64,000 nt of DNA from Camelus dromedarius (lineage: Eukaryota), in the NCBI RefSeq assembly GCF_036321535.1, contig NC_087444.1, positions 37,014,001 to 37,078,000 on the forward strand, given 5' to 3'. Shown in pieces: positions 6,101-64,000 of the stretch (the stretch's first letter is position 1; the number at the start of each line of letters is the position of its first letter). Below the pieces are notes generated by a model. The model ran no database searches, had not been told where the DNA came from, and saw only the letters and a program-made list of their open reading frames with translations. Both the position numbers and the translations under genes were made by a program.

Positions 6101-7500
6101 GTCTTCTTGGGAGGATTCTGTTGATAAGTATCTTGCGGGAGTGCAAACCAGGCATCGTTTCTGCCTTTCTGGTGGTTCCCTTTTGATGATATTCTGTGGG
6201 GAACAAGCAGGGAATGTCAGCTTGTCCTTGTGGTTACTCACAAGACAGGTTTTTTGGGGAGTTTGCTTGTGAAAACAAGAGCTTTTGCGTACCACTTGCC
6301 TGCAACCTGGGCATCTGACAGGGGTAGAGAGACAGGGCCAGGATTTTAGAAGCCAAGCCCTCTTCTCCCTTCCCCCACAGACCTGTTCCACCCTTTCCTC
6401 TACCTACTCTCCTTTGCCTCCCTCTGGCACAAAATCAGGGAAGGTTCTAGGAGAACATCTCCCTCACTGGGGGTTCCCCAAACTCCTACACAAGCCAGCT
6501 TATTCCCACAGTGGCTTAGCCCTGAGTTTGCCTATCGGCCCCACCCCATGCTGACTGTGTGCTCCCCACACTCACTCCCCTGTTGCTCTAAGGCAGGGCC
6601 AGCTCAACTTCCTCCCTGCCTCTGAGATTTATTCTGAGCTCCTGCTCACAGAAAGTGGATGCTTCTCTCTCTTTACCTGGACAGATAAGACAGACCCTCC
6701 AGAGATGAGCCGCAGGGAACACAAACACATCTTTAACTCCAGAGCCCGCAGGGCCCACACACGTGAGCGCGCGTGCACCCACGCATGCGCACATCTCGCA
6801 CGCACGTGCACGCGCATATTTTCAGTTACACACAAAACCCGTTTTTGCAAACATTCATGTGGCTGAGACACTGAGGCCACCAGGGGACCTAGGCCTCACT
6901 GCCTGCCCCAGATCTCTAGCACCTTGGCCACGGAGGATTCTGGTGACACCTGTGTTGCTTCTTCCAGCCTTCAGCTGTTCTGAGGGCTATTTATATGTTC
7001 TCGAGAAAGTAGGGGAGGCTAGTTGCTTGGCTAATGCCAAGCTGAGGCCCTGGATTGGGAGCTGAGTCCACGGGTCTCAGGGCCACCTTCTGAAAGTCGC
7101 AAAGCTTGGGGTCCAGCACACTTCGTCCTCCTGCTCCCTGGGGGCTTCGCTGGGTCTCCTCCAGGCCACCCTCCAGCCCTCCTATACCCAGCAAGAATGC
7201 CAAGTCCCCGCTCTGACCCAGCCCCTCCCTCGGCAGGCATTCAGTCCCATCCATCACTAACCTTCCTGCCCTCCCCTCATAGTCATCCCTTTTGAGCCCC
7301 AGTGTGACCTCGTCCCACCTCCCACTTCCATCAGCACGTTCTCAACCACACAAGACACCACACACCACAGTGGGTCCCTATTGTAGAAGGGCCCTTCTCT
7401 GACCTGCCCTCAAACTCTAGCCAGCAAATGGCCACCAGACCTAATGCCCAGCACACTCTGAGGCCAAAGGGCTAACCCCAGGCCCAATGCTGCTTCTTAG

Positions 7501-10500
7501 ACCAACGTGTGGTACAACATCCCTGTGTCCTCTGCCTCCCTTCCGGCCATCAAGAGCCTGGGTCTCAGGGGCATCTCCTGCATCAGCCTGACCATCCTGG
7601 ATGGCTCGCCGGCTTCACACCGGGTGCTGAAGTCTGTTGCCTACCACATGGGCCCACACCTGCAGAGTTTGTGCCTCAGTGGGGGCAGCCCCACAGAGGC
7701 CCCCTTTGTGGCCCTGATCCTGGGCTGCCCGGCCCTGCGTATCCTTGACCTCAGTGGCTGCAACAGTCTCTTCACATCGAGCATGCTGCTAGCTCAGCCT
7801 GAGACAGCACAGAGGGTCCAGCAGGCACTGAGTGGCCTCTGTGAGTTCAACCTGGCTAGCCTGCAGGACCTGGCTGATCTCAGCTTCAACCGTCTCAGTA
7901 GCTGTGCCCCCAGCCTGGAGCGCCTCTCTTTGGCCTACTGCCACCTCACCTTCGAGCAAGGCCCAGCCAGGGGCTCCATCGGCCCCCAGGACTCCTCCCC
8001 CTCCCAACTCTCCTTTCACAACCGGCTGCGATTTGTGAAGGAGCGGGCTGGTAGGCTGTGCGCCCTGGACCTGAGTGGCACTGGCTTGCCACCCGAGGCC
8101 CTGCAGGCCCTGGGCCAGGTGGCCGGGCTGCAGCTGCAGGAGCTGAGCTTGCACAGCTGCCAGGACCTCTCCACAGAGGCTGTGGCCGCTCTTTGCTACC
8201 AGCAACCAGGCCTTACCTCCTTGGACCTCAGTGGCTGCTCAGAACTGTCTGATGGGGTGCTCTTGGCTGTGAGCTGAGGCCTGCAGCACCTGCAGCACCT
8301 GAGCCTGAGGAAACTGCAGCGGCTCACAGATGCAGGATGCTCAGCCCTAGGGGGCCTGCGGGAGCTGCAGAGCCTCAACATGGCCGAGCGCTGCCAGGTG
8401 AGAGGGCGGGAACTGGCCCAGGCGCTGGGCTTGGTGCAAGGAGCTCCACCCCCATTGGCCTCCCTCAGCCTGGCCTACTGCTCCTCACTCAAGGTGAGCA
8501 TCCCATCCCCTTCGTTCCTTCCCCACCAGGGCTAAGGGCTGGGGTGACTGGGATTGTGGCATCAGGGAGGTGCCCAGTGTTCATGTCCAAGTGGTAGTAG
8601 TAGAACTGAACTGGGGACATAGTCTGGAAGGGGAAAGGAGCCTAGACAGTGCTGCCGCCAACACTCCTCCCTGCAGCCCCGACGGTGGGTCCAGGTAGAG
8701 GGAGGTCCAAGAGATCAGGGTGGTCCAGCCCCCAAGGTGGCACACACCTCACAAGCCAAGTGCTTAGTGACCACTGCAGTCTTTGGAGGAGCTCTGGGGG
8801 CAGGTGTTCTGGAAGCCGGGAAGGCTGGTAGAAGGGGTGACAGAACCCAGTCCTGCGGGGAAGGGGCACTGAGGTTCCACCGAAGTGGTTGCTCTGGCAG
8901 GGTCCGAGGGAGGGAATGTGATGTGGGAGCAGAAGGGTCATTTCTTGGCTGAAGCCAGTTTCTTCAGTAGGACTCAGCCCTGCCCCTCTGGGTGGTGTCC
9001 CTGTCTTGGCAATGTCAGTCTCTCCCTCGTTAGCTGATTATTCCTTCAGTCTAGCACTGTGCCCAGGGCATTCCTAACCTGAAAACCATCTCAGCCTTTT
9101 TCCCCACAGGCGCCTCTCTTCCTCTGCCCTATTCCATCTTCACTGCTTCACTGCTGTGTGTCTCTTAGCTGCTCTCTCTGGGGCCCCACATTCTCATGTC
9201 TCTGCATCTCTCTACAAACCAGCTTCCTCTATTCTGCACTTAATTCCTGCTCCCCCTACCTAACCCCAGCTGCTCCTGGCAGGTGGCAGCCCTACCTGGT
9301 CTGTGACCTCACAGTTCTAGCAGGAGCATGTCTGACTGGCTCAGCTAGGATCAGATGTCTGCCACTGGTGCTGGGAGCATAGGCAAGGGGAATACCACAG
9401 GAATTTTCACCTGCATCCTTCCTGCCCCAGCCAATTTGTCCTTCTCCTGGTGTTGCATCTCTAGAACCCACCTCATCCATCTACACTGACTTTCACCAGC
9501 ACCAGAACATTGTTGCTTCCTTCGAAGGACCCTGTGGTAGCTCCCTATTGTCTGTGGGGCTGGAACCCTGGGCAGAACCCTCCTAGTGATCCCTGCCAAG
9601 CCTGGTGACACAGGCACACCTCTCCACTGCCCTCTCCCTTTTCTACTTCCCTCCTAGGACGCCTCAGTGTTCTCCCTGATCCCCGTGCTGAGCCCAAGCC
9701 TTAGGGTGCTAGACTTATCCTCCTGTGTGGCCCTCACCAACCAAACCATGCAAGCCATCTGCACCTATCTTACCCACCTCTCAGTCCTGCGTCTGGCCTG
9801 GTGCAAGGAGCTCCATGACTGGGGGCTTCTGGGGCTGAGGGAACTAAGTGAGGAGGCTTTGAAAGAGCCCAGGTGAGGGACCCTGGATGTCAGGGTGGGT
9901 GGGGCGTTCTCTGCCCTCCTACCCCTCCTAAGTCTCTCTCTGGGAACATTTGAGGGTCAAACTCAGGAGGAACCTGAGGCAGGGGCTTCTTCCCACAGCC
10001 ACACCGAGAGCTGGAGCATCAGGCCTCCAGCCCCAAGAACCCTTCTCCCCAGCCACAGGACCCCTCCCTGCTCACGTGGCAGGCCCTGCGGGAGTTGGAC
10101 CTCACAGCCTGCAGCAAGCTGACTGATGCCAGTTTGACCAAGGTGTGGGGCTGGGGGCTGGAGCCAGGGGCCTGGGCCAACCCACTTTTTGTTTGGAAAA
10201 ACTTCCTTTCTTATGGGCTTCTGCTGCTTTGGCCATTCCTCTGGCTGGGGGCAGAGGAAGTTGGAAGGGCCCTAGACCTGGGCTCCAGTGCACATTACCC
10301 TCCACCCCACCCCCATCCTTACAGGTGCTCCAGTTCCCCCAGCTGAGGCAGTTGTCACTGAGCCTGTTGCCCGCACTTACAGGCAAGGGCTTGGTGGCTG
10401 TGGCCAGGGGTTGTCCCAGCCTGGAGTGCTTGGCGCTGAGTCACTGCAGCCTCCTCAATGACAAGGGCTGGGCCCAGGCAGCCAGCTCCTGGCCAAGGCT

Positions 10501-10796
10501 GCAGCATCTCAACCTGTCCAGCTGCAGTCGGCTTACAGAGCAGTGAGTGTGTCCAGTGTTGCCACAGTGCAGGGGTTTGGCTGGGGCCCATGCTGAGTTG
10601 GGCACTCATCTAGTGGCCTCCCTGCAGAACACTGGAAACCACTGGGCAGGCGTGCAAGCAGCTCCAGACGTTAGATGTGGCCATGTGTCCTGGCATCGGC
10701 ATGGCTTCTGTCAGGTGCTTCCAAGCCCAACTGCCCCAGGTGACCTGTGTGCAGTCCCGCTTCGTGGGGGGTGCTGACCTGACCCTAACGCTCTGA
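7501..10796 (+). pseudogene. LRRC29: Leucine-rich repeat protein 29 (FBXL9), apparently disrupted. Exons 7501-8493, 9658-9872, 9999-10142, 10325-10542, 10628-10796 (TGA). The N-terminal F-box exon was not identified and probably lies upstream of the window.
   Basis: Cys-containing LRRs (LRILDLSGC, LQELSLHSC, LTSLDLSGC) and the C-terminus QSRFVGGADLTLTL* match LRRC29. All introns are GT-AG. There is an in-frame TGA at 8275-8277 with the LRR frame continuing behind it, and exon 9658-9872 is 215 nt between two phase-0 junctions. Confidence 0.85.
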
Positions 10797-12608: not shown

Positions 12609-15600
12609 TCAGGGTTCAGCAATGCTGCAGTCATAGCAGAAGTTGAAGTTGGTGGGGGGTGGGGGGATGGGGGGTGGCTGCTCAGGGATGGGCACGTTCT
12701 CCAGTTCCAACAACCGCAGCTTGGTTTCCATGGTCAGCAGCTGTTCCAGGTCCAGCCGTGTCTGCTCACTGCCCATGGGACTGCCCAGCAGGGCACTCAG
12801 CCCATCTGTCCACAGGTGGAACTGGGGATGGGGCCAGCTCCATGAGGGCCTACCCGTCTCTTCCCCTGCCCATCTGCCCAACTCTGCTCAACCTGCCCAG
12901 ACACTCACCTCCCGTTTGGATGGGGCAATGAAGTTGAGGTAGGCCTCCTCCTCCCCGTGGTCATAGCTGATTGAGAAAGCTAACTCACAAAAGTCCTAAG
13001 GAAGCAAGGAAGGCAGAAGCACTGAGCAGGGGGCAGGCGGGAAGGAGCCCCTGGCCCCCACTGCACTCACCTTGTTCTGCTTCCCTGAGCCCTTCTCCCG
13101 GACATGGGGGCAGTCCTTGCCTGTCAGTAGTGCCCTGATGTCGGCCACGGGGACTGCAGGAAGATGGTTGGGCTGACCACTGGAACCCCAGGCGGTCCCG
13201 GAACATGGGGTGGTCTGGGGAAAGCAGGTGTCTGACCCCCAACCTGCCCTCCTTACGCTGCTCAGGCAGGCTCTCCGGGACCGGGGGGCCGGAACCCTCC
13301 TCCACATCCCCATACTGCAGCACCTTGTGGTTGGGGGACAGGCAGCAGAACCACAGCTTGTCTGTGGGCAGAAAGGGGCAGAGGTAAGGAGTGATGAGAG
13401 GGACACTCCCTGACCCCAACCCAGCCTCCCTCTACCCCCCCTGCCCACGTAATGACCCTGGCGCCGCCGGCTGCTGATCTTGCGGAAGAGTGTCCCCTCG
13501 CAGAGGCGGAGCAAACGCTGCTGGCGGATCAGGCCCATGAGCTCTGGCTTCAGCTTCTCCCGCAGCTCCCTGGGTGAGAGGAGGGGGCTCACTGACCAGG
13601 ACTGACCTGGGCAAGGCCCATGGGGCAGCAGGGAAGGCGGGGGCAAGGATTGGGACCCATCCCCACCAACTCACAGAATGGGAGGGGCCAGTGTGCCTTC
13701 CTGATGCAGCCGCTCGGTCTGCCGCAACCGCAGCACCTCCCCATAGGTGAGCGTGTTCACCTTGGTTCGGAAGAGCTCTAGGGAGCTGGGCTTCAGGGCC
13801 AGCGTGCGGGCCAGCTGCTCCCGCACCACTTGCATGACCTGGGGCCACCCCAAGCTCAGCTCAAGGCCTGAGCTCTGGGCCTCGACCCAGAACAGCCCCC
13901 TGCCCTGGCCTAGGGCTCTCTGCTCCCATCCTACGCACCTTGTCAAAGTCCTCCTGAGTGGCCCGCATCTCCTTCCAGGTCTTATTCAGCAGCTGGATGC
14001 TCACACAGAAGAGCTCATGGAAGCTCTGGTCTTGACTGAAGAACATGGGTGAAAAGTCCTGGGCTGTTTCGGAGCCTGGAGTGGGGGGGCAGGAGGGGCT
14101 CAGGGAGAAAGTGTGTGCAGCCCCTGGCCCTCTCTGCCCTTCCGTCCCCCGTTCCTAGACACGCTGTGCCCTGAGCACCACTCACAGGGCTCTCCGACAC
14201 GGAGCAGCTCACACAGCAGCACAGTCAGCTGGATGCTGCTCCGGGCAAAGGGGCACTCATGCTTGTCCTCACGGCTGCTGTTCTCCAACACAAACTGGGT
14301 GATGGGAACACAGAATTGGGTGAGGAATCATGACAGCCCATGGAGATCCTGCTTAGGTGGCTTCCTGCTATATCCCACCCCGCCCAGTCACTGACCCGGC
14401 TGTAGGCACTGGGTGCATGTCTGGAAAAGTAGAGCATGTTGTCCAGGGCCAGCAGGCCAGGGGGCACGCGCTCCAGGTCCTGCGCAGGGTTGCTGTTCTA
14501 GGGGAAGGGGGACAAGCCACTCAGGAAGGGCTCCCAGCCCTCTGGAATAACAGCAGTCTCAGGCTGAGGTGGGGGTGTGGAGCTTTGTAGGGGTCACTCA
14601 CAGAGAAGCCCAGTTTGCGGAACTCGCGGGCACAGAGGGAACGACGACGGTCAGCACTCAGCCCAGCACCCAGGGGCTCCCCCTCTGGCTCAAAAGCAGC
14701 CTGGCGCAGGGCTTGTAGCTGCTCCCGCTGCTCCTGGGGTCATTGTTGGAGGGGTGTCAAGACTGAAGAGTCAAAGCCAAGCTCCAGCCATCCCCAGCCT
14801 TGTGCATCCCAGAGGTTTGTGCTACCTGGCTGTAGGGGTCCAGTGGCGTGCGCATGCGTGGTTCCAGCAGCCCAAGTGTAAGGGCCTGCAGTACGTACAA
14901 GTGGTGAGCCATCTCGTCGCCCAGTGGCGCTGCACTGTGGATGATGTTCTAGAGAACAGGCAGTCCGTGGATGTGAGTGTGGGCTCAGGAGGAGAGGAGT
15001 TGGGAGGGGTCTGCCTGGTCTGGTCCTTCCTACCTTGTAGATGAACTGGCGAAGGTTTCTCTGCCACAGGTAGTCAAGCATGTGCTGAGGTGGGTGGGAA
15101 GGGGGACTTAGGTGATTTAGCCCCACCATGAGCATGCACCCTGTACGCCTAGGGTGGAGCACAGCACCCACCAGTTCCTGCCCCCCATCCAGCCACTGGA
15201 TGGACACCTACCTTACGTTCAGCAGGGCTGGCTCCCTGCAGCAAAGCTGTCAGCAGTGCCATGGCCTTGGTTTGCAGCTGCTGGTTCATCCTGGGGCAAG
15301 AAGAGGGCTCAACCAGCCATCTGGGGTCCAGCCACACTCCCCTCATCTGAATCCCAACCCAGACACTTACACCTGTAGGTGCACCAGCAGCCTATCCAAT
15401 GGCACCTCGCTCTTGACCAGCTGGCCCAGGGCAGGGCTGCTCAAGGTCACACTCTCCAGCAACCCCAGGGCCAAGGGCTGCACAGATGCATCCATCAGGT
15501 TCATGTTCACGTAGCACACCACCTGTAAGAGAAGCAGGAGTTGTCACCACCTCATCACCATGGAAGGTTAGACCCTGACACCACCCCTCTGCCCCTAGAA

Positions 15601-17274: not shown

Positions 17275-17406
17275 NNNNNNNNNNNNNNNNNNNNNNNNNN
17301 NNNNNNNNNNNNNNNNNNNNNNNNNNNNNNNNNNNNNNNNNNNNNNNNNNNNNNNNNNNNNNNNNNNNNNNNNNNNNNNNNNNNNNNNNNNNNNNNNNNN
17401 NNNNNN
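17275..17406. other. N-run (132 nt). The other N-runs are at 22752-22963, 23678-23817, 45137-45268 and ~63421-63637.
   Basis: Directly visible in the sequence. Confidence 1.
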
Positions 17407-21000: not shown

Positions 21001-23729
21001 AAACCCCACAAGGTCTCTTCCATCACACAGAGGTATTGCCTCTTGGGCCCCAGAAATCACCCCATTACTAGCTTCCCGTTGTGCCTCACCTGTGATCTCA
21101 GCTGCTGGACTGGCCACCCCCTGAGCTTCGGTGCTGCCAGGGACAGGGGTAGGGGTGGTCACCTGGGGACTGCTTGGGCGTGAGGCATCCTGGGGTTGAG
21201 CCAGGGCAGGCTCGGGCAGAGGCGGAGGGGTAGAGACAGCAGGTGGGCTCTGGAGCAGATCTTCGGGTGGTGGCACAGGCACTGCCACAGGCGGCGAGCT
21301 CCATGCCTCCTTGTTCACCAACAGTACCTCAATGGGGCCACTTACACTCTTCAGGTGAATCTGGTACTTCTTCTGCCCATTGAGTCCCTGGAGGTAGAGG
21401 TTGAGGATGGAGGAGAGATGGAACTGGAAACAGGATTGGCCCTTGCCTGACCCTGGGCCAGGGCCACAGTGTCCTCTCCCACCCCAGGCTGCCCGTTCTC
21501 CTAGATAACCCCAAACCCCAGGCCTCCCCCTACCTGCCCCACCCGGGACTTATCAGGCTCCACAGCCAGCACCCGCCCTCAATCAACCCTGCCTGCCTGG
21601 GCTGAGCACCCACCTCTGGGATGGGCACCTCCAGGCTGGTGCCTGATGGGGCCCGGATGGCCAGAAGGGTGTCTCCTAGGATGACAAGGAGAATGGGTCA
21701 AGGCCCATGGGCTCAATCTGAGCTGGGAATGGGGGTATCTATCCCTTGGAGCAAGGAAGGAGTTCATGGTCTCCGAGGGGCTGGACAGGAGGCTTCATTC
21801 ATCCCTTATGGTGGCTCAGCGGCTAAGGCAGAGAACTAAAGCTTTTCTCCTCCTAAGAGCCCAGGGGCCTGTAACTAGAAAATCTGGGTTCAGACAAATG
21901 AAGCAGAAGATTGCTGGCCATGGACATCTCCCTGATTGAAGGGGCTGCTCCCTAGACATAGATATTCTGGCCAAAGCCAATGTCCCTTCCCCAGAACCAG
22001 TCTGGGAAGTGCAAGATGGAGAAGGAACAGTTCCCATAACTACAATGCAACTAAACTAACTATAGATTGGAAGTTGGCATCATTGCCCCCTGCACACCAG
22101 CATTCACACACACTTTCTCCCTTGTATGATTCTGTTACATCTGAAAACTCATACCTAGGGGACAGTGCAGATAGGGGCTGACCCAGGGATCCAGCCCAGG
22201 ATTCCCATATCCTCTCAGTATGGTTAGCCTCCACAGGGTCCAGTGACCCTCGAACCCAGGACTTACCCTGTCTGGATCTTCTTTGGGTAGGCCCCAGGAA
22301 CCCTCTTAAGAGAAGGAAATCTCCTTGGGCACTGAGCTCATTGTTCAGGGCTGTGGCTCAGCCCAACCCCACCCCCATCTCCCCCTACCCAGGCTCTGCT
22401 CACCAGCAAAGCATCTGCAGATGTCCTCATGAGTCACGTAGGCCAAGGTGTGGGGGTTAAGGAGAACAGCTGATGCCCTGCCTACAGTGACAGATAGCAG
22501 ACCACAGAGAGGACCCAGATCTTTAGCACAGCTCTGACATACATGCCCTCAGAAAAAGTCCTGAGGCCTGGGGTCTACATGGGGAGGTATCACAGGCCAA
22601 AACTGATGGGAGGGGAGAGGCTCTGAGAAGGGAGCCCAAGGCTGGGACCTGGCCAGGACATACAATACCATCCTCCCAAGAGGGACAGGGCCTAGGGGAC
22701 CACAGAGCAAACCCAGCTGGACTAAAGAGCCCCTCATCCACTCCCCCGGAGNNNNNNNNNNNNNNNNNNNNNNNNNNNNNNNNNNNNNNNNNNNNNNNNN
22801 NNNNNNNNNNNNNNNNNNNNNNNNNNNNNNNNNNNNNNNNNNNNNNNNNNNNNNNNNNNNNNNNNNNNNNNNNNNNNNNNNNNNNNNNNNNNNNNNNNNN
22901 NNNNNNNNNNNNNNNNNNNNNNNNNNNNNNNNNNNNNNNNNNNNNNNNNNNNNNNNNNNNNNNCTGCCAAGAATCCTGGGGCCCATGGCCCCTGCTCACT
23001 CCTGCACCCCCCACCCCTGACACTTCTGGTAGGCGATCCCATTGCCCTCCCAGGTGCCCACACTCACTTCCACTGGATGCTATTCTTGGATTTTTTCTCG
23101 ATCAGCCCAATACCTTCCAGCACGTTAGTAATGTCATAAATCCGCCGCTTCTGGCGCACAGCTAGGGTGTCAGCTGCCTGGCAGGCAGAACAGAGTGGGA
23201 AATGCTCAGCCTTACTCTCAGGTGAGACTTGGTCTGGAGTAGTCTGGAAAAGGGGTGGCCTGGATCCCAACCCTCCTCCCAGGCACTACAGCAGCTCAGA
23301 AGCGCGAGGTAGGAAGAGGCCTGGTGCAGCCTGAGCTGCTGTTCTGATGCCCTTCTCCCCACACCTGCCAGGAAGGGCCACGAGGACCAGCACCTGCAGC
23401 CCCAAGCCTGGCACACAGCTGATGCCCAATGGCCTCGGCTGAATGAATGAAACAGCTCCCAGCCTCCCTCCTGTGAGAAAGCACATGGATGGCAGTCTGC
23501 TCTCTGAGGGCTCAGTTGGGCCCCCCCGGGATTCCCGCTACCGGCTCAGGCCTGGTCCACCATCCCCTCTGCCGCCCCTTAGCCCGGGCCGCACCAGCTT
23601 GAGGTCAAGCACGCCGTCCTTGGCCTCCTGCAGAAGCGACACGAACTTGGTGGTGAGAAGTCCCAAGCTCTTCTCGTNNNNNNNNNNNNNNNNNNNNNNN
23701 NNNNNNNNNNNNNNNNNNNNNNNNNNNNN
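18071..23729 (-). CDS. E2F4: Transcription factor E2F4. Exons: ~23729 (ATG inferred inside the N-run)-23595, 23177-23068, exon 3 hidden in N-run 22752-22963, 22447-22404, 21675-21614, 21387-21090, 20627-20430, 18593-18546, 18330-18286, 18186-18071
   Basis: Contains [27 protein letters not shown], the DNA-binding motif [18 protein letters not shown], a poly-Ser tract, and the pocket-protein-binding C-terminus [23 protein letters not shown]. Confidence 0.95.
19169..19351 (-). mobile_element. tRNA-derived SINE in an E2F4 intron, with a perfect 12-bp TSD
   Basis: Same family as 554-701 (gtatagctcagtg...gggttcaatcccca on the minus strand). The TSD aaagatactttt is at 19169-19180 and 19340-19351. 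Confidence 0.9.
20497..20517 (-). repeat. E2F4: Coding (AGC)7 repeat, E2F4 poly-serine tract
   Basis: gct x7 on the plus strand, translating [16 protein letters not shown]. Confidence 0.95.
22448..22463 (-). other. E2F4: U12-type branch site and AC terminus of an E2F4 AT-AC intron
   Basis: The minus strand reads TCCTTAAC-ccccacAC|c ttg gcc tac. There is no AG at the boundary of the [14 protein letters not shown] exon. Confidence 0.85.
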
Positions 23730-23817
23730 NNNNNNNNNNNNNNNNNNNNNNNNNNNNNNNNNNNNNNNNNNNNNNNNNNNNNNNNNNNNNNNNNNNNNNN
23801 NNNNNNNNNNNNNNNNN

Positions 23818-43696: not shown

Positions 43697-48245
<4,549 letters not shown>

Positions 48246-62293: not shown

Positions 62294-64000
62294 CCACTTA
62301 TCACAGCACCCAGCTCCCCTCATTCAGACCCAGGATGTAGTGGGAGGTGGTTTTAATGGTAGGTTTCCCAGGGCGGATTACTGCGGTGTGTATGGTTCTT
62401 CCGCAGAAAAGGGCGTGAGTTCAGGATCCAGCCCCACTATCACCAGGAGTCTGCCGCCTCAGGGTCTCAGGGATTGAAGATTGAGCTTGGCTCCTGCTGA
62501 CCTACCCTAATGGGAGGTGATCTGGAACCAATCAAATGGTGGCTCTTGAGATGGGCAGGGATGAGGTGGTGTACCATCAGGCTCTTTGCCAAGCAGATAA
62601 ACATGTTTGGTGCTCCTAGTAGGGACGTGTGTGTGGTGGGAGTGGCAGAGGCTCATGGAATCTGACCATACTCCTTGGCTTGGAATTCCTAGGGCAGACA
62701 AATGCAGGTCTTTCTCAAGGATGGCCCCACAGGGAGGGGCGGGGGTAGGGACCTGACCTCAGTCCTTATGGGACTGGCTGGCATTCTCCCACAACTCAAT
62801 CTGAAAGTAGGTGTTTTGCTTCCTACCTGTCCCTTCAAAGTGGATTCTTAATCCTGTCCAGGTCTTTAGTTCTCCTACTGTCTGCTTTCCTGGGGCCAAC
62901 TCCCGAGCCCTGGACTGGATGGAACACCAGGGATGGAGACACACAAGGACTGAGGGCATTGTCCTACCTAAAGTCTTTCACCACCTCCAGCTACCCACTG
63001 AAAAAGAACCTACAACCACAAAACTGAGTCTCCTACTGGAGGCCATGCTGCCCCCTTCAGAGGAGCCAAGGAACCTCTTCTCCTAAGATGACTTCACTAT
63101 TAATTTCCCCATATTCTTCAACCACCCCCTTTCTCATCCCCCACCAAAAAACAATGCCTCCATGCTTATTTTAGTACAAACACCCCAGCAACAGCATATT
63201 GCTGAGGGCATAGGTCTTTATTGGAGGAGGGGTGTGGGCAGGGCATGAGGAAGGTTCCCCCATTCTAGGAGGATGGGAACAGTCCTGGCTGCCCCACAGT
63301 GGGATGTGCAGGGTGTCTCTGGCCAGGCCACAGTCCACATGGGAAGACACTAATCAGTCACAAAGTCATGGGAATGCCACACAAGCCTGGCTATATGCCC
63401 AGGAACCACAAAGGAGCCCGNNNNNNNNNNNNNNNNNNNNNNNNNNNNNNNNNNNNNNNNNNNNNNNNNNNNNNNNNNNNNNNNNNNNNNNNNNNNNNNN
63501 NNNNNNNNNNNNNNNNNNNNNNNNNNNNNNNNNNNNNNNNNNNNNNNNNNNNNNNNNNNNNNNNNNNNNNNNNNNNNNNNNNNNNNNNNNNNNNNNNNNN
63601 NNNNNNNNNNNNNNNNNNNNNNNNNNNNNNNNNNNNNNTTCCTTAGTAAGTCCCATGAAGAGACTGAGCAGCCAGCCCTCCTTGAGCCCCAGAGGCCTTG
63701 AGCCATGAATGGGCCTGGCCAGGAGACACTGCCCTGGCTTGGGACAGCGAAGCCAAGCCCATAGTGCAGGACAGAATGCTGAAACACAACAAAAGGAGGA
63801 AGATGTCTTTGGCTAAAACTTTGGCATTAAATAAAAGAGGCAGACAAGATGGAAACATGCAGCCCCGCCAGCCAGGTTGGGCAGAGTAGGGGCACAGGCA
63901 ACCCTGAAGGCTCGCTCCAAGAGGGGTGGGAACCAGGTCTGGGCACATAACTCAATGGTAGAAAGTTGTTTCAACCACTTGGGAGTGCCTACTGGGCCTA

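What the first reader, a model, noticed from the sequence alone, without database searches (positions are those of the whole stretch)
8275..8277. In-frame nonsense codon in LRRC29/FBXL9: probable lineage-specific gene loss
Seen: ...VLLAVS-TGA-GLQHLQHLSLRKLQRLTDAG..., with the LRR frame continuing 72 codons to a normal donor at 8493. The stop is 216 nt upstream of that junction. Established: stops more than 50-55 nt before a junction usually trigger NMD, and CGA>TGA is the commonest nonsense route (CpG deamination). Inference: the full-length SCF substrate receptor is lost here. Nearby odd residues (LNMAERCQ where Cys/Leu are expected) suggest relaxed selection. Human LRRC29 is, from recall, also annotated as a truncated product, which would imply repeated independent decay of this gene.
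Basis: partly seen in the sequence, partly recalled or inferred. Interest (0 to 1): 0.7.

Follow-up and report, generated by a model that had tools for sequence, protein, structure and literature searches.

The report
Camel LRRC29/FBXL9 gene is broken
Old World camels carry a genuine premature stop codon plus a one-base frameshift in their only copy of LRRC29/FBXL9, a poorly studied F-box protein, so they cannot make the full-length protein; this is an ordinary lineage-specific gene loss in a gene that also looks broken in a cetacean-like contig, pangolins and probably humans.

Summary
TGA at 8275-8277 lies in frame in the 993-nt LRR exon (7501-8493, + strand) of LRRC29/FBXL9.

- **Ancestral state:** five orthologue contigs (Bos, Ursus, a phyllostomid bat, Manis, a cetacean-like contig) have CGG (Arg) there, so the stop took two substitutions, not CGA>TGA alone.
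- **Not an assembly error:** the same stop is in contigs from at least 8 sequencing runs of a relative 0.8% diverged (the Camelus ferus/bactrianus type). Runs under four organism labels hold sequence around it. Two database proteins end at it: C. ferus XP_032342437 and a 209-aa protein identical to the window's own sequence.
- **Second shared lesion:** a 1-bp deletion at the 3' end of the next exon (9658-9872, 215 nt against 216) shifts the frame.
- **What is intact:** the gene is single-copy, the start and F-box exons are intact, and all splice sites are intact.
- **Selection:** dN/dS on the camel lineage is 0.35 against a background of 0.22 (p=0.06-0.09) and is clearly below 1. The loss therefore looks recent, and relaxed selection is not demonstrated.
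- **Independent lesions elsewhere:** a cetacean-like contig, pangolins and human-like ORFs.
- **Not obtained:** no RNA splicing evidence and no New World camelid sequence.

This is an ordinary unitary pseudogene of modest interest. The scan's other notes on this gene lie in this same genome.

The parts
7501..8493 (+). Large LRR-coding exon of LRRC29/FBXL9. It is 993 nt (331 codons) and phase 0 at both ends, with acceptor AG at 7499-7500 and donor GT at 8494-8495.
   Evidence: The length is identical (993/994 aligned nt) in Bos, Ursus, bat and cetacean-like contigs. Pfam LRR hits.
8275..8277 (+). Premature TGA at codon 259 of this exon, about residue 301 of a 621-aa orthologue. The orthologous codon is CGG (Arg).
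   Evidence: Shared with the 0.8%-diverged camel relative. Database proteins P0178 and P0179 end here.
8269..8370 (+). In-frame 102-nt GT...AG stretch that the GenBank C. ferus model EPY84211 treats as an intron to jump the stop (...DGVLLA|SLNMAERC...). It is probably an annotation device, not a real intron.
   Evidence: P0171 sequence read. The 20 nt before the AG are purine- and G-rich, so the polypyrimidine tract is poor (read directly from the sequence).
8380..8382 (+). First ATG after the stop. It could start an F-box-less 214-aa ORF if exon 9658-9872 is skipped (38 + 48 + 128 codons).
   Evidence: Exon arithmetic. Isoforms that skip this exon are annotated in other mammals (P0028, P0059, P0061).
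9658..9872 (+). LRR exon E2, 215 nt in both camels against 216 nt in Bos, Ursus and the bat. One base is missing in the run at 9868-9870 just before the donor (GAGCC-CAG|GT). Spliced to the next exon, this gives a -1 frameshift and early stops.
9999..10142 (+). Exon E3 (144 nt, phase 0/0), with intact AG/GT.
10325..10542 (+). Exon E4 (218 nt), with intact AG/GT (donor GTGAGT at 10543).
10628..10796 (+). Last coding exon E5, ending ...GGADLTLTL, with the normal stop TGA at 10794-10796.

Best explanation
The window comes from an Old World camel (Camelus). It is most likely the dromedary, because the C. ferus proteins match the 0.8%-diverged relative rather than the window. Its single LRRC29/FBXL9 gene is a young unitary pseudogene, or at best a severely truncated gene.

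Shown:
- An ancestral Arg codon CGG became TGA in the middle of the LRR domain.
- One base was lost at the end of the following exon.
- Both changes are shared by the two diverged camel lineages, so they predate their split.

Inferred:
- No F-box + complete LRR substrate receptor can be translated.
- The main mRNA carries a stop 216 nt before the next of four downstream exon junctions, so it should be degraded by nonsense-mediated decay.
- Anything that escapes would give a 300-aa F-box + N-terminal LRR fragment lacking the C-terminal 52% of the protein.
- The inactivation occupied only about 17% (roughly 1-42%) of the camel branch, so it is recent.
For: - **The stop is real and in frame:**
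- **Orthologues have CGG/Arg:** Bos, Ursus, a phyllostomid bat, Manis and a cetacean-like contig all have CGG. Most proteins in alignment A1 have Arg, as does another intact mammal, L022.
- **The stop is shared:** it is present in 8 runs of a 99.1-99.4% identical relative. Runs under organism labels A and B hold 7400-9000, and labels A, C and D hold the 72 nt around the stop.
- **Annotation ends at the stop:** RefSeq C. ferus XP_032342437 (323 aa) and the 209-aa P0179, whose names and accessions are withheld as for a protein the window itself encodes, both end at ...LLAVS.
- **An older model avoids the lesions:** the GenBank C. ferus model EPY84211 skips over the stop and the frameshift site.
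- **Second lesion:** exon E2 is 215 nt in both camels against 216 nt in Bos, Ursus and the bat. The concatenated CDS shifts frame after ...EALKEP.
- **Single copy:** only one LRRC29 locus exists in the 2.3-Gb assembly.
- **Orthologue length fits:** intact orthologues are 621 aa, which equals 8+34+331+72+48+128 codons of the camel exons.
- **Isoforms pass through the codon:** every F-box-bearing isoform seen in other mammals does so, including those using the internal acceptor near 8203.
- **Camel-specific replacements at conserved positions:** C297R, L299Q, L175R, L430W and D471G.
Against: - **No RNA or protein evidence.** The RNA-library contigs that cover the locus are unspliced, and read laying was lost.
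- **Selection signal is weak.** dN/dS on the camel lineage (0.35) is not significantly above background (p=0.06-0.09) and is well below 1 (p about 1e-5). Much of the sequence therefore still looks constrained.
- **The rest of the gene is intact.** All ten splice sites, the start codon and the F-box exon are intact.
- **Only two lesions** were found in 1.74 kb of coding sequence.
- **Truncated or F-box-less products are annotated** and could have some activity.
Confidence: 0.8

Rival explanations
1. The gene is remodelled rather than lost. Camels would still use a shortened product: either the 300-aa F-box + N-terminal LRR fragment, or an F-box-less C-terminal LRR protein of 214 aa. The latter would start at ATG 8380 and skip exon 9658-9872, comparable to the short human product.
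For: - Camel-lineage dN/dS is below 1 both upstream (0.31) and downstream (0.39) of the stop.
- All splice sites, the start codon and the F-box exon are intact.
- Isoforms that skip this exon exist in other mammals.
- Truncated ORFs are in the protein databases.
- The 214-aa ORF is open.
Against: - The low dN/dS is expected anyway, because most of the long camel branch predates the lesions. The two post-split tips show 5 non-synonymous and 4 synonymous differences, which is uninformative.
- An internal AUG about 900 nt into the coding sequence, after many upstream AUGs, is a poor start without its own promoter. No such promoter was shown.
- Half an LRR solenoid is unlikely to keep its substrate specificity (inference).
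Confidence: 0.14
2. The stop is removed by splicing. The in-frame 102-nt GT...AG stretch at 8269-8370 would act as an intron inside the exon (an 'exitron'), as drawn in the C. ferus model EPY84211, restoring a long reading frame.
For: GTGAGC at 8269 resembles a donor, and AG at 8369-8370 closes a stretch that is a multiple of three. The deposited model P0171 uses exactly this jump.
Against: - The same model needs two more ad hoc jumps, one of them over the E2 frameshift. This is typical of a predictor avoiding lesions.
- The GTGAGC is conserved in all species simply because it encodes Val-Ser.
- The acceptor has no pyrimidine tract.
- Removing 34 residues does not fit the roughly 25-residue LRR period (inference).
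- The newer RefSeq model stops at the TGA.
- The E2 frameshift would still break the frame.
Confidence: 0.03
3. The TGA is an assembly or sequencing error, or a rare allele of the sequenced animal.
For: Only contig-level data were available (Logan contigs drop minor variants), and no raw reads were laid.
Against: - The same codon is present in 8 runs of a diverged relative.
- It is present in 14 DNA runs from 6 studies.
- Sequence around it is held by runs of three further organism labels from 8 studies.
- It is reflected in independent C. ferus annotations.
Confidence: 0.02

Closest known systems
Mammalian LRRC29 / FBXL9 (621-aa F-box/LRR-repeat protein, for example Bos javanicus P0099 and Ursus arctos P0110)
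   Same: - Same exon structure and exon lengths.
- 84-88% protein identity.
- F-box exon recognised by Pfam PF00646.
- Cysteine-type LRRs.
- Single locus lying tail-to-tail with a gene that encodes an ELMO-type PH domain.

   Different: The camel copy has TGA in place of Arg codon 259 of the large exon, and a 1-bp deletion in the next exon. The 621-aa frame is therefore broken twice.
Truncated human LRRC29 products (cDNA FLJ57407-derived protein P0038, 180 aa; human-like Logan ORF P0037)
   Same: The reading frame also ends prematurely inside the same large LRR exon. The F-box remains attached to only a few LRRs.
   Different: The position differs: after ...TFELGPA, where chimpanzee P0032 continues with Arg, about 100 codons upstream of the camel stop. 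It is therefore an independent event. I did not inspect human DNA, so the nature of the human lesion is inferred from proteins only.
LRRC29 in a cetacean-like contig (L016/L017) and in pangolins (Manis, L019/L020)
   Same: Independent inactivation of the same gene.
- **Cetacean-like contig:** two lost acceptor AGs, +1 and -2 frameshifts, and dN/dS of 1.05.
- **Pangolin:** two premature stops, plus in-frame 12-nt indels.

   Different: None of these lesions coincides with the camel lesions. The cetacean-like copy is much more decayed, with dN/dS near 1.
Classical unitary pseudogenes dated by shared lesions and dN/dS mixing (the Meredith/Springer-type approach)
   Same: Single-copy gene, inactivating mutations shared across a clade, and an intermediate dN/dS that allows a rough date.
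   Different: No trait is known to link to the loss, because the function of LRRC29 is essentially uncharacterised.

Membership tests
FBXL (F-box/LRR-repeat) family, orthologue of LRRC29/FBXL9 | N-terminal F-box domain | tested here: met
   The camel F-box exon lies 554-453 nt before the window start (L009 1504-1605). It scores 21.9 bits on PF00646 (cut-off 20.5), and the cow orthologue scores 28.6 bits. The exon has intact AG/GT. The ATG exon is intact.
FBXL (F-box/LRR-repeat) family, orthologue of LRRC29/FBXL9 | C-terminal array of leucine-rich repeats | tested here: met
   LRR_4, LRR_1 and LRR_6 score above their cut-offs on 7540-8274, and LRR_6 does so on 9658-9870.
FBXL (F-box/LRR-repeat) family, orthologue of LRRC29/FBXL9 | One-to-one orthology (best reciprocal similarity, exon structure, single locus) | tested here: met
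   The top named hits are LRRC29 proteins at 84-88% identity. All five exons align with the same lengths. The genome holds only one locus.
FBXL (F-box/LRR-repeat) family, orthologue of LRRC29/FBXL9 | Uninterrupted ORF joining the F-box to the full LRR domain, giving a functional SCF substrate receptor | tested here: not met
   TGA at 8275-8277 and a 1-bp deletion in exon 9658-9872 interrupt the ORF.
FBXL (F-box/LRR-repeat) family, orthologue of LRRC29/FBXL9 | Binding to SKP1/CUL1 | not testable with these tools
   No complex prediction was run. It would not bear on the question of the stop codon.
Unitary pseudogene / lineage-specific gene loss | Inactivating mutation verified in independent data and shared by related species | tested here: met
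   Both lesions are present in the window and in contigs of a 0.8%-diverged relative from 8 runs.
Unitary pseudogene / lineage-specific gene loss | No intact paralogue or duplicate that could replace it | tested here: met
   A whole-genome six-frame search with the cow protein found only this locus. The other hits were only 31% identical.
Unitary pseudogene / lineage-specific gene loss | Relaxed selection (dN/dS raised towards 1) on the affected lineage | tested here: inconclusive
   In my own GY94 branch model, camel is 0.35 against a background of 0.22. The likelihood-ratio test gives p=0.06 (all camel branches) to 0.09 (stem only), and camel=1 is rejected at p about 1e-5. The simple non-synonymous:synonymous count is 25:23, against 22:37 for Bos and 25:44 for the bat.
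Unitary pseudogene / lineage-specific gene loss | Loss or decay of the transcript or protein | not testable with these tools
Nonsense-mediated decay target | Stop codon more than 50-55 nt upstream of a downstream exon-exon junction | tested here: met
   The stop ends 216 nt before the 8493 junction, and three further junctions follow. Actual degradation was not observed.

The most novel reading that the evidence does not exclude
LRRC29/FBXL9 is a recurrently dispensable F-box gene. It would have been inactivated independently at least four times in placental mammals: Old World camels, a cetacean-like lineage, pangolins and humans. Each time the lesions differ, although the gene is under clear purifying selection (dN/dS about 0.2) in cattle, bears and bats. 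If so, comparing the losing lineages could point to the unknown substrate or physiological role of this orphan SCF receptor. The camel case, being young, would mark the most recent of these losses.
Probability: 0.6. Interest if true: 0.45.

Novelty: new member of a known kind. Interest (0 to 1): 0.3.

Why it matters
LRRC29/FBXL9 is one of the least understood F-box proteins; I know of no established substrate (from memory).

A natural knockout fixed in camels shows that the full-length protein is dispensable in several large mammals. Independent knockouts in pangolins and in a cetacean-like lineage, and truncation in humans, point the same way. This agrees with a published observation that Lrrc29 was the only F-box orthogroup in Euarchontoglires whose dN/dS was not significantly below 1 (PMC3984280).

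It has practical value for annotation. One deposited camel gene model (EPY84211) hides the lesions behind invented introns. Newer models list truncated 'uncharacterized' proteins.

It is not a surprising kind of event, and no camel trait can yet be tied to it.

Tried and rejected
1. **Raw-read check.** As a result there are no allele depths and no splice junctions.

2. **New World camelids.** I looked for alpaca- or llama-type sequence to date the loss.
   - No ORF at 90-98% identity appeared in three protein searches.
   - The two best non-Camelus candidates were not camelids. P0188's contig gave no DNA and carries an intact 364-aa exon ORF. P0189/L022 is only 77.6% identical to the window and is intact with Arg.
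   - Absence from these searches says nothing about the state of the gene in New World camelids.

3. **Assembly error or rare allele.** Rejected.

4. **Hidden intact duplicate.** Rejected.

5. **Selenocysteine or programmed read-through at TGA.** Rejected by inference. Orthologues have Arg, not Cys or Sec, and a frameshift follows in the next exon.

6. **Different selection upstream and downstream of the stop.** Camel dN/dS is 0.31 upstream and 0.39 downstream. Neither differs significantly from background, so there is too little power.

7. **Literature.** No paper in the library links LRRC29 with camels, pangolins, cetaceans or gene loss. Supplementary gene-loss tables were not searched.
Full report
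**1. The observation**

The window reads ...GTG CTC TTG GCT GTG AGC TGA GGC CTG CAG..., with TGA at 8275-8277.
- The frame is open for 258 codons upstream, back to the acceptor (AG 7499-7500, exon start 7501).
- It stays open for 72 codons downstream, to AAG|GTGAGC at 8493/8494.
- Both flanks are leucine-rich-repeat sequence by Pfam.

**2. What the gene is, and which animal**

A search with the 245 residues upstream of the stop returned mammalian LRRC29/FBXL9 proteins at 80-88% identity. A second search returned the full-length 621-aa orthologues with an F-box from many orders.

The best hit, P0001, is 99% identical. It is a 256-aa ORF from Logan contigs that ends at the same ...LLAVS. Its 90% cluster contains two other relevant proteins:
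- RefSeq XP_032342437 of Camelus ferus, 323 aa, also ending at ...LLAVS.
- A 209-aa protein identical to the window's own sequence, listed with names and accessions withheld.

An older GenBank C. ferus model (EPY84211, P0171) matches the window's exons almost perfectly, but it jumps over the stop and two other stretches.

The C. ferus proteins carry the variants of P0001 (AYHTGPH, LQEMSL), not those of the window. I therefore infer that the window is the sister Old World camel, most likely the dromedary.

**3. Gene model**

tblastn with orthologues, together with a multiple alignment of genomic contigs, gives five exons inside the window, all with AG/GT:

| Exon | Coordinates |
|---|---|
| Large LRR exon | 7501-8493 |
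| E2 | 9658-9872 |
| E3 | 9999-10142 |
| E4 | 10325-10542 |
| E5 | 10628-10796 |

Two further exons lie upstream of the window.
- The F-box exon is 554-453 nt before the window start. It has intact splice sites and is recognised by PF00646.
- The ATG exon (ATGGCGGAGTCGCTGCCCCTGGAG|GT) is about 3.65 kb before the window start and is also intact.
- If unbroken, the exons would add up to 8+34+331+72+48+128 = 621 codons, the length of the orthologues.
- A whole-genome six-frame search finds no second copy.
- A PH_12 domain of the ELMO type lies on the minus strand at about 13.0-13.7 kb. This fits the tail-to-tail ELMO3 neighbour known from other mammals; that neighbourhood is recalled, not tested.

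**4. Is the stop real?**

- Eight contigs from eight sequencing runs are 99.1-99.4% identical to the window over 2-7 kb, introns included. They belong to a close relative, and all carry the TGA.
- Fourteen DNA runs from six studies, under organism labels A and B, hold every sampled 31-mer of 7400-9000.
- A 72-nt query centred on the stop is held by runs under labels A, C and D from eight studies. Only three words were sampled, so this is a weak search.
I could not see allele depths, and I sent nothing from those places to any search afterwards.
- An assembly error or a private allele is effectively excluded. Fixation in all populations is not formally shown.

**5. Ancestral state**

I fetched genomic contigs for intact or broken orthologues and identified them by identity to named proteins.

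| Contig | Closest named protein |
|---|---|
| L012 | Bos, 100% |
| L014 | Ursus, 100% |
| L018 | Glossophaga, 97.6% (a phyllostomid bat) |
| L019 | Manis javanica, 97.4% |
| L016 | Shares derived motifs with Pontoporia and Lagenorhynchus proteins; overall identity only 87-90%, so I call it cetacean-like |

- All five have AGC CGG GGC where the camels have AGC TGA GGC.
- The stop therefore needed two substitutions: either CGG>CGA>TGA or CGG>TGG>TGA. Only one step is a CpG transition.
- The single-step neighbours occur elsewhere: Trp in Pontoporia and Gln in P0024.

**6. A second lesion**

Exon E2 is 215 nt in both camels and 216 nt in Bos, Ursus and the bat. One base is missing just before the donor: GAGCC-CAG|GT against GAGCCTCAG|GT and similar. 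The exons on either side are phase 0, so the spliced frame shifts after ...EALKEP and meets a stop within E3. This is evidently the second lesion alluded to in the scan's note s1-178597. Two shared lesions in two diverged camel lineages place the inactivation before their split.

**7. Selection**

I built a 579-codon alignment of seven sequences. I then fitted a GY94-type branch model of my own (F3x4, fixed tree) by maximum likelihood.

| Lineage | dN/dS | Test |
|---|---|---|
| Background (Bos, Ursus, bat, internal branches) | 0.22 | - |
| Camel stem | 0.345 | p=0.09 against background; p=1.4e-5 against 1 |
| All camel branches | 0.353 (profile interval about 0.23-0.55) | p=0.06 against background |
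| Cetacean-like | 1.05 | p=4e-8 against background |
| Pangolin | 0.365 | p=0.019 against background |

- Treating the camel value as a mixture of 0.22 and 1 puts about 17% (1-42%) of the branch after inactivation.
- With a camelid branch of about 60-65 My (recalled, not computed), this means roughly 10 My, with very wide limits. The loss must also be older than the dromedary-Bactrian split.
- Upstream and downstream of the stop, camel dN/dS is 0.31 and 0.39, with no detectable difference.
- The two camels differ at 5 non-synonymous and 4 synonymous codons.
- Camel-specific replacements do hit conserved LRR positions: C297R and L299Q right after the stop, plus L175R, L430W and D471G.
- The non-synonymous:synonymous count (25:23) is only moderately above Bos (22:37) and the bat (25:44).
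The picture is of a recently broken gene.

**8. Consequences (inferred)**

- Every F-box-bearing isoform I saw in other mammals includes this codon. That covers those using the internal acceptor near 8203 (ALRE|QPGLTSLDL...).
- The canonical mRNA has its stop well beyond the 50-55 nt limit before a junction, so by the established rule it should undergo nonsense-mediated decay.
- Escaping transcripts would give a 300-aa F-box + N-terminal LRR fragment.
- An F-box-less 214-aa ORF from ATG 8380 with E2 skipped is open, but nothing shows that it is used.
- The in-frame GT...AG stretch at 8269-8370 used by EPY84211 has a poor acceptor. It would delete 34 residues and would not cure the E2 frameshift. 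I regard it as an annotation device.

**9. Comparison and novelty**

The same gene is broken independently in three other places.
- **Cetacean-like contig:** lost acceptors of E3 and E5, and +1 and -2 frameshifts.
- **Pangolins:** two stops and two 12-nt in-frame indels, seen in two runs.
- **Human-like ORFs:** they end after ...ELGPA, where chimpanzee has Arg. I saw proteins only and did not inspect human DNA.

A published analysis found Lrrc29 to be the only F-box orthogroup of Euarchontoglires whose dN/dS was not significantly below 1 (PMC3984280). I found no paper describing LRRC29 loss in camels or the other lineages.

The camel lesion is therefore a new, undescribed member of a well-known kind of event. 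The databases reflect it only implicitly.

**10. Verdict**

- The finding is an ordinary, recent, lineage-specific loss of a weakly characterised gene.
- Interest is modest. It rises somewhat if the recurrent-loss pattern holds up in a systematic screen.

Noticed in passing
L016 and L017 (ENA metagenome contigs, identical over the gene); orthologous to window 7501-10796: A cetacean-like LRRC29 copy is heavily decayed. E2 is 217 nt (+1), the E3 acceptor is AA instead of AG, E3 is 142 nt (-2), the E5 acceptor is GG, and terminal-branch dN/dS is 1.05. Named cetacean entries agree: Lagenorhynchus is flagged 'LOW QUALITY PROTEIN' and the Pontoporia translation is frameshifted. The species of the contig is unknown, and its identity to named cetacean proteins is only 87-90%.
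   Followed up: partly
L019 and L020 (Logan contigs, Manis-like); orthologous to window 7501-10796: Pangolin LRRC29 has an independent premature stop 13 codons downstream of the camel one (...SLRIL*). It also has a second stop in E4 (DEG*AQAA), a 12-nt deletion in the large exon and a 12-nt insertion in E2. The M. javanica GenBank protein KAI5943141 ends at the first stop.
   Followed up: partly
Proteins P0037 and P0038 (human-like); aligned to about window 7501-7965: A human cDNA-derived protein (FLJ57407, 180 aa) and a Logan ORF both end after ...HLTFELGPA inside the same exon. Chimpanzee isoform X7 continues there with Arg. This is consistent with a separate human truncation. No human DNA was inspected.
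   Followed up: no
Protein P0171 (GenBank EPY84211, Camelus ferus) against window 7501-10796: This deposited 651-aa 'LRRC29-like' model avoids the stop (jump 8269-8370), the E2 frameshift (jump ...KEP|SPKNP...) and a further 42-codon stretch that shows no lesion in my sequences. It should not be used as evidence of an intact camel protein.
   Followed up: partly
window 12999-13670, minus strand: An open frame here has a PH_12 domain (PF16457, 30.2 bits), as in ELMO proteins. This is consistent with ELMO3 lying tail-to-tail with LRRC29.
   Followed up: partly
window about 10150-10160 (intron after E3): The window lacks an extra GCTGGAGCCTGGGG copy of a short G-rich repeat that the sister camel has. 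Other mammals have a longer, different sequence there. It is an intronic indel of no obvious consequence.
   Followed up: no
window 17275-17406, 22752-22963, 23678-23817, 45137-45268, 63421-63638: Five runs of N (834 bases in all).
   Followed up: no
L001-L008 (contigs apparently from 2025 RNA-seq runs labelled reproductive-system metagenome / organism C): Contigs from RNA libraries cover up to 6.7 kb of the locus colinearly with the genome, including introns and the region beyond the normal stop. They represent unspliced RNA or DNA carry-over and say nothing about splicing.
   Followed up: partly
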